A stretch of 63,841 nucleotides of DNA, the filler included, from Octopus bimaculoides (Eukaryota): assembly GCF_001194135.2 (NCBI RefSeq). It is 8 parts of 6 records of this genome, joined end to end, with 100 filler letters (N's around TTAATTAATTAA, not from the genome) between each part and the next. Parts side by side here need not be neighbours in the genome. Positions count along the whole stretch, not along the records: positions 37,606 to 59,132 come from NC_068982.1; 7 more parts are not named here. The stretch is one strand, 5' to 3'. Under the pieces are notes generated by a model. It saw only the letters and a list, made by a program, of their open reading frames with translations. It had not been told where the DNA came from and did not search any database. Positions 44,861 through 46,658 of the stretch are shown here, piece after piece. Numbering within the stretch: the stretch's first letter is position 1; every line of letters begins with the position of its first letter. The position numbers were made by a program, and so were the translations under genes.

Positions 44861-45197
44861 CCCCTCGGCATCATCAATGTTTAACATCTGTTTTCCATGC
44901 TGGCATGGGTTGGATGGCCTGACCAGAGCTGGCAAGGCCAGGGACCACACTAGGTTCCATAGTCTGTTTTGGCTTGGTTTCTCTGACTGGATGCCCTCCC
45001 TAATGTGAACCACTCCACAGAGTGTACTGGGTACTTTTTACATGGTACCATCACCAATGCTTTTTACATGGTACCATCACCAATGCTTTTTACGTGGAAC
45101 CATCACCAATGCTTTTTACAAAGCATCAGCACCCACACCAATGCTCTTTATGTGACATCTTGGCACATATGTGGTCTGACCAATAAGGATCCTGACT

Positions 45198-45211
45198 GTT
45201 GCCATAGTAAC
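45198..45211 (+). promoter_or_regulatory. RFX X-box GTTGCCATAGTAAC
   Basis: Full match to the RFX consensus; function untested. Confidence 0.5.
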
Positions 45212-46004
45212 GAAGCTAAAGCATGCAGAGTGAAGCCACTTGGCACCGATAGACCTTGAACTCTGTTCTGCATGCGTAATAAGTTTCAACATTCTAGTTC
45301 ACTTCCGCTGTTGACAGCAGTACTTGGAAGGAACATGTGTAGCGTGCAATCGTCGCATTGACCATGACAGAAGAAGTTGAGCAGACAGTCTGAATAAAAT
45401 TTTTCCAAAAGTTCGGCGATACCTACTCCAAAGAGGCCTATGCAAAGTTTCCAAGAAGTTTTCATTGTTCTTGACACAACTGAGGAGATCTTGTGCAACT
45501 GAAACCCGAGCGTCTTTTTGGTCAGCTGAAGCAGTTTTGGCACAAACTTGGCAGACACGCGTCTCATGCCCAAATCTCCAGTGATAATGGACTGAACTGA
45601 ACCGTAACTAATCTGCACATCCTCTGATAACTCACAGATGGCAGTTTGACAGTTTCCCATCACAGATGCACACACATCTGTGATGTTTTTCTCAGTTCTG
45701 CTGGTTGTGGGTCTCCCAGAACGTTCTTCACTAATGACATTTTTTCAGCCATCTTGGAAACGTCTGAACCCTTCATACACTTGTGTGCGGCTCATACACC
45801 CCTCTCCATACACTTTCTGCAACTTTGTGTCAGCCTCTGAGCAGGTATCGCCATGACAACTTTCTCGGTCATGGTCAATGCGATGATCACATGCTACACA
45901 CCTTCCTTCCAAGCTCTGCTGTAAACAACGGAAGTGAGCTGGAATGTTAAAACTTAGTGCACATGCACAACAGAGGTCAAGGTCACTCTGTGTGCTTTAG
46001 CTTT

Positions 46005-46018
46005 GTTACTATGGCAAC
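46005..46018 (-). promoter_or_regulatory. RFX X-box (GTTACTATGGCAAC on + strand)
   Basis: Exact reverse complement of 45198-45211. Confidence 0.5.
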
Positions 46019-46658
46019 AGTCTGTATACTTATTAATCAGGCCTTATATATACCTGCATATAAACACACTTATATGCATGTTTGCATACATACATAGATG
46101 TATACACACACACATATACACATCCTTTCTCCCTTCCTTCCTCTGCTCTCCTATCTGCAGTGTTGCTCCCCCCCCCCCCAACGAAGATAAATCTGCATCT
46201 TGACATTCGTAACTGTCCCTCCATTTGTTACAATGATAAGGGTTCCAGTTTGTCCGATCAATGGAACAACCAGTTTGTGGAATTAACATGAAAGTGGCTG
46301 AGTACTCCACAGACATGCATACCTTTTACGTAGTTCTCAGGGAGATTCAGCATGAAACATGATGTGACAAGGCCGATCCTTTGAATTACTGGTACAATTC
46401 ATTTTATGAGTTGAGTGGAATGGAACAAGATGAAATAAAGTGTCTTGCTTAAGGAGACAATGTACTGCCAGAAATTGAACTCTCAACCTTATGATTGTGA
46501 GTCAAATACCCTAACCACTTAGCCACATGCCTTTACATTTGTCAATATTCTTTAATTATATACAATTAACTTCAACAAGACTAAAGTACTTCATAAATTA
46601 AACTGTGTCCTTCTATGCAAATGTAATTAGCTGATGTAATAAACCTGTTATTTTTCAG

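What the first reader, a model, noticed from the sequence alone, without database searches (positions are those of the whole stretch)
45193..46022. Inverted mariner dimer carrying two perfect RFX X-boxes inside a ciliary gene
Seen: two left ends of one mariner face each other, each with GTTGCCATAGTAAC ~135-150 bp upstream of its transposase ATG. The arms have diverged around the motif, but the 14-mer is identical in both. Known: RFX factors bind this X-box at ciliary genes, and RFX2 drives spermiogenesis genes. Inference: the transposon may use RFX for germline expression and may spread X-boxes, here into a VWA3A intron. An element with two left ends is also unusual.
Basis: partly seen in the sequence, partly recalled or inferred. 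Interest (0 to 1): 0.72.

Follow-up and report, generated by a model that had tools for sequence, protein, structure and literature searches.

The report
Decayed two-left-ended mariner remnant with X-box-like motif
This is an old, broken mariner transposon made of two inverted copies of its own left end, sitting in an intron; each copy carries the same inherited 14-base match to the RFX X-box, but nothing here shows that the motif is maintained or used, so it is an ordinary transposon relic with an untested idea attached.

Summary
An 877-bp element (45170-46046) is flanked by TA on both sides. It consists of two inverted copies of the 5' end of one mariner. GTTGCCATAGTAAC lies at nt 29-42 from each terminus, 166 and 146 nt upstream of the two transposase ATGs. 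The 14-mer fits the published X-box consensus GTNRCC N0-3 RGYAAC.

- The two boxes are one ancestral sequence duplicated with the arm, not two independent sites.
- The arms differ at 17% of sites. An identical run of at least 18 nt somewhere is expected in 75% of simulations, and this 14-mer stays intact by chance 7% of the time.
- Of six related 5' ends from other hosts, only the closest (L002) keeps a variant, GTTGCTATGGTAAC. 37 of 181 windows are at least as conserved.

The two-left-end layout has a precedent in Goblin, a Tc1/mariner derivative of Aedes. The arms overlap by 3 nt (GTT) at the junction, which suggests template switching during gap repair.

The copy is dead: its frame is broken by stops and shifts, and it has no catalytic domain. 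It lies in an intron of a multi-exon gene that resembles VWA3 only weakly (Pfam VWA_3, E=0.014).

Other copies from the same genome could not be obtained, so the family-consensus test remains open.

The parts
45168..45169 (.). TA dinucleotide flanking the left terminus (putative target-site duplication)
   Evidence: Read from the sequence. The terminus was placed by alignment with the ends of L002, L003 and L004. Weak evidence: the flank is only 2 bp and the surroundings are AT-rich.
45170..45197 (+). Left terminal inverted repeat (about 28 nt), TGTGGTCTGACCAATAAGGATCCTGACT
   Evidence: Aligns with the termini of relatives, which read CAAGGTCTGATCAAAAAGTATCGG... directly after TA.
45198..45211 (+). 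X-box-like 14-mer GTTGCCATAGTAAC, nt 29-42 of the left copy, 166 nt upstream of its ATG (45364)
   Evidence: It fits GTNRCC N2 RGYAAC and GTHNYYATRRNAAC.
45170..45449 (+). Left copy: nt 1 to about 280 of the mariner 5' end (TIR, 5' UTR, ATG at 45364, about 28 decayed codons with a stop)
   Evidence: blastn to L004 258-531, L002 255-543 and L001 285-499 on the + strand. Translation.
45447..45449 (.). Junction between the two copies: 3 nt (GTT) shared by both alignments, with no TIR at the junction
   Evidence: The + strand alignment ends at 45449 and the - strand alignment starts at 45447.
45447..46046 (-). Right copy: nt 1 to about 600 of the same 5' end (TIR, 5' UTR lacking 20 nt, ATG at 45872, about 140 codons of the HTH DNA-binding region). 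It has a frameshift or deletion after codon 6 and in-frame stops, and no catalytic domain.
   Evidence: blastn to L004 906-329, L003 3458-3051 and L001 873-297. Pfam HTH_48 E = 1.7e-4. Homologues at E = 7e-44. Frames.
46005..46018 (-). X-box-like 14-mer GTTGCCATAGTAAC, nt 29-42 of the right copy, 146 nt upstream of its ATG
46019..46046 (-). Right terminal inverted repeat (a second left-end TIR), TAAGGCCTGATTAATAAGTATACAGACT on the - strand
46047..46048 (.). TA dinucleotide flanking the right terminus
43874..44013 (+). Host-gene exon upstream of the element (…SSVEWLKQHGLK), with AG/GT splice sites
   Evidence: Sequence. tblastx matches L048 7437-7580 in colinear order.
46658..46765 (+). Host-gene exon downstream of the element (AKKLSLYHFLTPNAFNYQKHFIPVIGKTVQSQVHEV). 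Together with the exon above, it places the element inside an intron.
   Evidence: tblastx to L048 9405-9512, 64% identity.
47913..48089 (+). Next host-gene exon (KAMVQFQWHDGSVKNVHVDM…EWLSTGSRKIFGTIS)
   Evidence: (17 exon-sized homologues, 58-81% identical).

Best explanation
The feature is a dead, non-autonomous mariner derivative of 877 bp (45170-46046) lying in an intron.

How it arose: its 3' two-thirds, including the catalytic domain and the true right end, were replaced by an inverted copy of its own first ~280 nt. The most likely route (inferred) is excision of a full-length copy, then gap repair that switched template and was closed by end joining at a 3-nt microhomology. The resulting unit has two equivalent left ends. 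It could therefore still be moved by a transposase supplied in trans, and it may have reached this TA site as a unit.

The motif: the X-box-like 14-mer lies just inside the terminal repeat, at nt 29-42. It was duplicated together with the arm, so the two boxes are one sequence by descent. Since then the arms have drifted about 0.1 substitutions per site each (K2P 0.19 between them). The 14-mer surviving intact in both arms is within neutral expectation.

Current status: the copy encodes nothing. Its X-box matches are most likely inert passengers. They may be remnants of ordinary 5' UTR or promoter sequence of one mariner sub-lineage.
For: Anatomy:
- The arms and their 83% identity are.
- Both arms align to the same 5' segment of relatives on opposite strands. 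The alignments overlap by 3 nt at 45447-45449, with no TIR there.
- TA flanks both ends.

Mariner identity:
- Pfam HTH_48.
- 169 homologues, the best at E = 7e-44. They include a full-length snail element with TA-flanked termini and Transposase_1.

Decay:
- Stops and frame changes.
- K2P 0.19 between the arms.

No excess conservation of the box:
- P = 0.07 for this 14-mer staying intact.
- 75% of simulations give an identical run of at least 18 nt.
- Against L002 the box is 12/14 identical, and 37 of 181 windows are as good or better.
- The consensus is not met in L004, L001, L046 or L003.

Background rate of the motif: 2 chance sites in roughly 270 kb of unrelated loci.

Precedents:
- Goblin carries the same end on both sides, in different lengths, with junction microhomology. 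It was explained by template switching during gap repair.
- Pseudo-Mos1 elements with two 3' ITRs transpose efficiently.
Against: - The box is still consensus-compliant in L002 (GTTGCTATGGTAAC), although the 5' region has K2P 0.30-0.39 to it. Both changes are transitions at degenerate positions. My rough estimate of neutral retention is about 0.05. This is one post hoc comparison.
- Position 29-42, about 150 nt upstream of the ATG, is a plausible place for a promoter element.
- Only one copy from this genome was available. Per-site decay across the family was therefore not measured.
- I also could not test whether the two-ended unit was amplified or arose in situ.
- TA flanks are weak evidence in AT-rich DNA.
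Confidence: 0.7

Rival explanations
1. One reading: the X-box is a working promoter element of this mariner sub-lineage. Under this view RFX factors, which are active in ciliated cells and in spermiogenesis, drive transposase expression, and each new insertion seeds an X-box.
For: - The 14-mer fits GTNRCC N0-3 RGYAAC exactly.
- It lies 146-166 nt upstream of the ATG.
- It occupies the same position, in a consensus-compliant variant, in the closest relative L002.
- RFX2 is linked to spermiogenesis (citing Kistler 2015).
Against: - There is no excess conservation.
- The box is absent from L004, L001, L046 and L003/L047.
- L002's version fails the stricter GTNRCC half-site.
- Degenerate X-box matches were as frequent in negative-control genes as in RFX targets in Drosophila.
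- Chance matches occur about once per 100-150 kb, so some transposon families will carry one.
- No paper linking X-boxes to transposons was found.
Confidence: 0.12
2. The 14-mer belongs to the cis-acting transposition machinery. It would be the inner edge of the transposase-binding end, or a UTR 'transposition enhancer', and would resemble an X-box only by accident.
For: - It abuts the 28-nt TIR, at nt 29-42.
- In Mos1, the UTRs next to the ITRs are reported to enhance transposition (background section).
- The central CATA is shared by most relatives.
Against: The outer positions are not conserved among relatives whose TIRs are conserved. There is no excess conservation relative to the rest of the 5' UTR.
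Confidence: 0.08
3. A rival for the origin only: two separate copies inserted tail-to-tail close together, and a later deletion removed both 3' parts and the DNA between them.
For: The arms are 17% different. That could reflect two source copies rather than drift in place.
Against: - This route needs three events instead of one.
- The junction is internal to both copies, with a 3-nt overlap and no foreign DNA.
- The same-end architecture has a one-step model.
- L001 shows that internal palindromic rearrangements occur in this clade.
Confidence: 0.15
4. The insertion has been co-opted as an intronic RFX-dependent enhancer of the ciliary host gene.
For: There are two X-box matches inside a gene that weakly resembles VWA3. 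VWA3A belongs to a human motile-cilia expression signature (abstract of 10.1101/817072).
Against: - The location is an intron, at least two exons into the gene.
- There is no X-box in the 20-kb homologous locus L048.
- The element is decaying neutrally.
- The gene's identity is unconfirmed.
Confidence: 0.03

Closest known systems
Goblin, a Stowaway-like MITE derived from the Tc1/mariner element Ozma in Aedes aegypti (PMC3814204)
   Same: [quoted passage not shown] There is microhomology at the junction. The proposed origin is template switching during gap repair followed by end joining.
   Different: - Goblin uses the right end; this element uses the left end.
- Goblin is miniature, with 54-bp TIRs. 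Here the arms are 280 and 600 nt and still include the start of the ORF.
- Goblin's microhomology is 6 bp; here it is 3 nt.
- Goblin is a proven multi-copy family; the copy number here is unknown.
Internally deleted mariner derivatives such as Galluhop (chicken) and MADE1 (human Hsmar1)
   Same: They are non-autonomous products of a mariner that keep the ends and lose the transposase.
   Different: Those are simple internal deletions that keep one left and one right end. Here the right end is replaced by a second left end.
Laboratory pseudo-Mos1 elements with two 3' ITRs (3Tet3 and others)
   Same: Two copies of the same end flank a stuffer of a few hundred bp. Such elements transpose at about 1e-4 in bacterial assays. 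A two-left-end element is therefore not mechanistically odd.
   Different: These are engineered, use the 3' end, and belong to a different mariner subfamily. No activity data exist for this family.
RFX X-box promoter motifs of ciliary genes (GTNRCC N0-3 RGYAAC; GTHNYYATRRNAAC)
   Same: The sequence fits the consensus exactly, including the 2-nt spacer.
   Different: - It is not upstream of a host gene's start.
- It is not conserved above background.
- It differs at two positions from the ideal palindrome GTTGCCATGGCAAC.
- Binding is untested.

Membership tests
mariner (Tc1/mariner superfamily) transposon | Transposase with an N-terminal Mos1-type paired HTH DNA-binding region | tested here: met
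   Pfam HTH_48 E = 1.7e-4 (22.1 bits, just under the 24.1 cut-off because the copy is decayed). 169 homologues, best E = 7e-44, most carrying PF17906.
mariner (Tc1/mariner superfamily) transposon | Short terminal inverted repeats flanked by a TA target duplication | tested here: met
   Termini at 45170 and 46046 align with the TA-flanked termini of L002, L003, L004 and L046. TA is present on both sides. TA alone is weak evidence.
mariner (Tc1/mariner superfamily) transposon | DD(34)D catalytic domain (Pfam Transposase_1) | tested here: inconclusive
   The domain is absent from this copy, because the copy ends at about codon 140. The relatives it aligns with continue into PF01359 (L001; full ORF in L003). 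The copy is therefore a truncated derivative, not a counter-example.
Same-end (Goblin-type) non-autonomous Tc1/mariner derivative | Both subterminal regions derived from one end of the parent, inverted, with different lengths | tested here: met
   The + strand 45173-45449 and the - strand 45447-45992 both align to the same 5' segment of L004, L001 and L002.
Same-end (Goblin-type) non-autonomous Tc1/mariner derivative | Microhomology at the internal junction | tested here: met
   3-nt overlap (GTT) at 45447-45449. This is shorter than Goblin's 6 bp.
Same-end (Goblin-type) non-autonomous Tc1/mariner derivative | Amplified as a family: many copies share the same junction | not testable with these tools
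   The source genome is not in any searchable collection. No closer relatives turned up in two protein searches or three DNA scans.
Functional RFX X-box | Sequence fits GTNRCC N0-3 RGYAAC | tested here: met
   GTTGCC-AT-AGTAAC in both arms. The consensus is as quoted in PMC10530576.
Functional RFX X-box | Promoter-proximal position upstream of the regulated gene's start | tested here: inconclusive
   The box is 146 and 166 nt upstream of the (dead) transposase ATGs. For the host gene it lies in an intron.
Functional RFX X-box | Conservation of the motif above its surroundings in related sequences | tested here: not met
   - Arms: P = 0.07.
- Against L002: 12/14, and 37 of 181 windows are at least as good.
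- Absent from L004, L001, L046 and L003.
- The sample is small.
Functional RFX X-box | Bound by RFX and required for expression | not testable with these tools
   This needs EMSA or PBM, CUT&RUN or ATAC, and reporter assays.
VWA3A (host gene) | VWA_3 domain and orthology to named VWA3A proteins | tested here: inconclusive
   Eight exons colinear with L048. The joined peptide hits Pfam VWA_3 only at E = 0.014, 15.9 bits against a cut-off of 27. The 17 homologues are unnamed exon-sized ORFs. There is no PDB relative.

The most novel reading that the evidence does not exclude
The active ancestor of this mariner sub-lineage (this copy plus L002) used an RFX X-box, placed directly inside its left terminal repeat, as a promoter element. 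That would tie transposase expression to RFX-positive cells such as spermatids or ciliated cells. Its thousands of insertions would then have scattered ready-made X-boxes through a cephalopod-like genome, some of them available for rewiring ciliary or testis genes.
Probability: 0.1. Interest if true: 0.6.

Novelty: new member of a known kind. Interest (0 to 1): 0.2.

Why it matters
As it stands this is routine repeat annotation: a decayed non-autonomous mariner in an intron. The two-left-end layout adds an animal example to a mechanism already described for Goblin, namely template switching during gap repair that produces same-end derivatives.

The RFX idea would matter if it were true. A DNA transposon that borrows the ciliogenic and spermiogenic regulator for germline expression, and then spreads X-boxes, would be a new route of regulatory rewiring. 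The present evidence, however, is a single motif match retained at about the neutral rate.

Tried and rejected
1. Looked for more copies of the family to build a consensus.
- A metagenome scan with a conserved 5' UTR pattern gave 40 hits, none homologous by blastn.
- A scan of genome contigs with a TIR-plus-downstream pattern that left the box region free gave 8 bacterial chance hits, none homologous. The same pattern gave 0 hits in viral contigs.
- A profile search with the four closest N-terminal sequences found no relatives closer than those already in hand.
- The piece itself holds no other copy.

2. Tried to name the host gene.
- The exon query returned only unnamed exon-sized ORFs at 58-81% identity.
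- There is no PDB relative.
- Pfam VWA_3 was below threshold.

3. Tried to identify the organism behind L002 (SRR8281669). No paper holds the accession.

4. Searched the literature for X-boxes in transposons and for two-left-end mariners. Nothing relevant came up under those terms.

5. Considered that the two boxes are independent evidence. Rejected: both sit at nt 29-42 of homologous arms.

6. Considered two adjacent insertions plus a deletion. Kept as a minor rival.

Full report
**Observation**

The 14-mer GTTGCCATAGTAAC occurs exactly twice in the window, at 45198-45211 on the + strand and 46005-46018 on the - strand. Shuffles give 0.19 matches on average even when two mismatches are allowed. 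These are also the only matches to the nematode-type X-box consensus GTHNYYATRRNAAC.

The two sites lie in inverted arms, 45167-45379 and 46049-45857. The arms share 161 of 193 aligned bases and differ by one 20-nt indel.

**Anatomy**

Relatives retrieved from other hosts were used to place the termini (L002, L003, L004, L046). The element runs from 45170 to 46046 (877 bp), with TA at 45168-45169 and at 46047-46048.

- The + strand from 45173 to 45449 aligns with the first ~280 nt of the relatives. This covers the terminal repeat, the 5' UTR, the ATG at 45364 and about 28 codons.
- The - strand from 46046 back to 45447 aligns with the first ~600 nt of the same relatives. This covers the terminal repeat, the 5' UTR, the ATG at 45872 and about 140 codons.
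- The two alignments overlap by 3 nt (GTT, 45447-45449). There is no terminal repeat at the junction.

The structure is therefore two unequal pieces of one left end joined head to head internally. It is not a dimer of elements.

The coding remnant is the Mos1-type HTH region. Pfam HTH_48 scores E = 1.7e-4, and there are 169 homologues, the best at E = 7e-44 and 59-67% identity. The remnant is broken by a frame change after codon 6 and by in-frame stops. The catalytic domain is missing. Relatives continue into Pfam Transposase_1.

The X-box-like 14-mer occupies nt 29-42 from each terminus, directly inside the ~28-nt terminal repeat. It is 166 nt (left) and 146 nt (right) upstream of the ATG.

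**Is the motif an X-box?**

By sequence, yes. GTTGCC-AT-AGTAAC fits GTNRCC N0-3 RGYAAC as quoted in PMC10530576. It also fits the Drosophila and nematode consensus forms. It differs at two positions from the ideal palindrome GTTGCCATGGCAAC.

Sequence fit alone is weak evidence:
- In Drosophila, degenerate X-box matches were as frequent upstream of negative-control genes as upstream of RFX targets. Conservation and position were needed to find real targets (PMC2375033).
- At that rate a large genome holds thousands of matches, and some transposon families will carry one by accident.

**Is the motif kept more than chance would allow?**

The two boxes sit at the same position in homologous arms, so they are one ancestral sequence copied with the arm. 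They are not two independent observations.

The arms differ at 16.8% of sites, a K2P distance of 0.19. Scattering the observed 32 mismatches at random over 193 positions gave these results:
- This particular 14-mer stays intact in 7% of trials.
- An identical run of at least 18 nt, the observed longest run, appears somewhere in 75% of trials.
- A second identical run of 16 nt lies around the ATG.

Six related 5' ends were aligned.
- Only the closest, L002 (a Logan assembly of SRR8281669, organism unknown), has a consensus-compliant variant at the same position: GTTGCTATGGTAAC. It fits GTHNYYATRRNAAC but fails the stricter GTNRCC half-site.
- L004, L001, L046 and the snail element L003/L047 do not fit any X-box consensus.
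- Against L002 the box window is 12/14 identical, and 37 of 181 windows of the same length are at least as conserved.

Both differences in L002 are transitions at degenerate consensus positions, and L002 is 0.30-0.39 K2P away. My rough estimate is that neutral retention of a consensus-compliant box over that distance has a probability of about 0.05. This is one comparison chosen after the fact, so it is a hint and not a result.

**The two-left-end layout**

- Goblin in Aedes aegypti derives from the Tc1/mariner element Ozma. [quoted passage not shown] It was explained by template switching during synthesis-dependent gap repair followed by end joining (PMC3814204).
- Laboratory pseudo-Mos1 elements built with two 3' ITRs and stuffers of 375-1200 bp transpose at about 1e-4 (PMC2642840). 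Two equivalent ends are therefore compatible with mobility.
- One relative, L001, carries its own internal palindromic duplication inside the transposase gene. This suggests such repair accidents recur in this clade.

I infer the same origin here. It is not shown. Two tail-to-tail insertions followed by a deletion remain possible.

**Host context**

tblastx against L048 was informative. L048 is a 20-kb stretch of a 70.9-kb metagenome contig, recovered through a homologue of one exon. The comparison shows eight colinear + strand exons:
- 42346-42447
- 43874-44017
- 46658-46765
- 47913-48089
- 48855-48935
- 50197-50271
- 50890-51003
- 52026-52277

The element lies in the intron between the second and third of these. 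It is therefore intronic and at least two exons into the gene.

The joined peptide hits Pfam VWA_3 only at E = 0.014, below the curated cut-off. The homologues found are unnamed exon-sized ORFs, and there is no PDB relative. 'VWA3A' is thus plausible but unconfirmed. VWA3A itself is reported in a human motile-cilia signature. L048 has no X-box match.

The flanking repeats look like octopus SINEs to me. That is from memory and was not tested.

**Mechanism and verdict**

The best-supported reading (confidence about 0.7) is this. A full-length mariner was excised. Its gap repair switched template and produced a same-end, non-autonomous unit. That unit now sits, long dead, in an intron, and its two X-box matches are one inherited piece of 5' subterminal sequence drifting neutrally.

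Three less likely readings remain:
- A cis role in transposition is a further alternative (about 0.08). In Mos1, the UTRs next to the ITRs enhance transposition.
- Co-option as an enhancer of the host gene is unlikely (about 0.03).

**What could not be done**

The decisive test is decay of nt 29-42 relative to its flanks across many copies of the family. It needs the source genome, which none of the collections holds.

Noticed in passing
window 53576-54277 (+): There is a second, unrelated mariner-type transposase fragment. It has an open frame of 234 codons covering the catalytic half (Pfam Transposase_1 E = 4e-23, DDE_3 E = 3e-7). It is far better preserved than the element under study, carries no X-box match, and may be a younger family.
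   Followed up: partly
window 45034-45120: A 26-bp tandem repeat (CTTTTTACATGGTACCATCACCAATG, 3.3 copies, 95% matches) ends about 50 bp before the element's left terminus. Its origin is unknown, and it is not part of the mariner.
   Followed up: no
window 46843-47331: A pyrimidine-rich degenerate repeat field (units of 8, 16 and 40 nt based on TATTCTGC) lies in the next intron. It produces long spurious ORFs.
   Followed up: no
window 40411-40908 (+): An open frame of 166 codons (KEYKRHHDNIARLVHW…DIACPADNKV…) has no Pfam hit. From memory it resembles the C-terminal region of retroelement polyproteins. This was not tested.
   Followed up: partly
L001:1030-1160: The soil-metagenome relative carries an internal palindromic duplication inside its transposase gene. 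The gene caller placed a Transposase_1 ORF on the opposite strand. This is another hairpin-type repair product in the same mariner clade.
   Followed up: no
L003:3563-3640: The otherwise full-length snail (Bradybaena similaris) element has a direct duplication of about 40 nt (ggatgagtcgcagcaatgtgaagacccttttgatcgtt, twice) that breaks the ORF.
   Followed up: no
alignment A2 (ours, L002, L004, L001): The ~190-nt 5' UTR of this mariner clade is about as conserved between hosts (68-74% identity) as the coding region that follows. This fits either recent horizontal spread or cis-acting constraint on the UTR.
   Followed up: partly
window 39990-40010, 42440-42460, 50640-51650, 56430-56530: Runs of N (582 in all) lie inside the piece. 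These are assembly gaps, so the exon and repeat content there is unknown.
   Followed up: no
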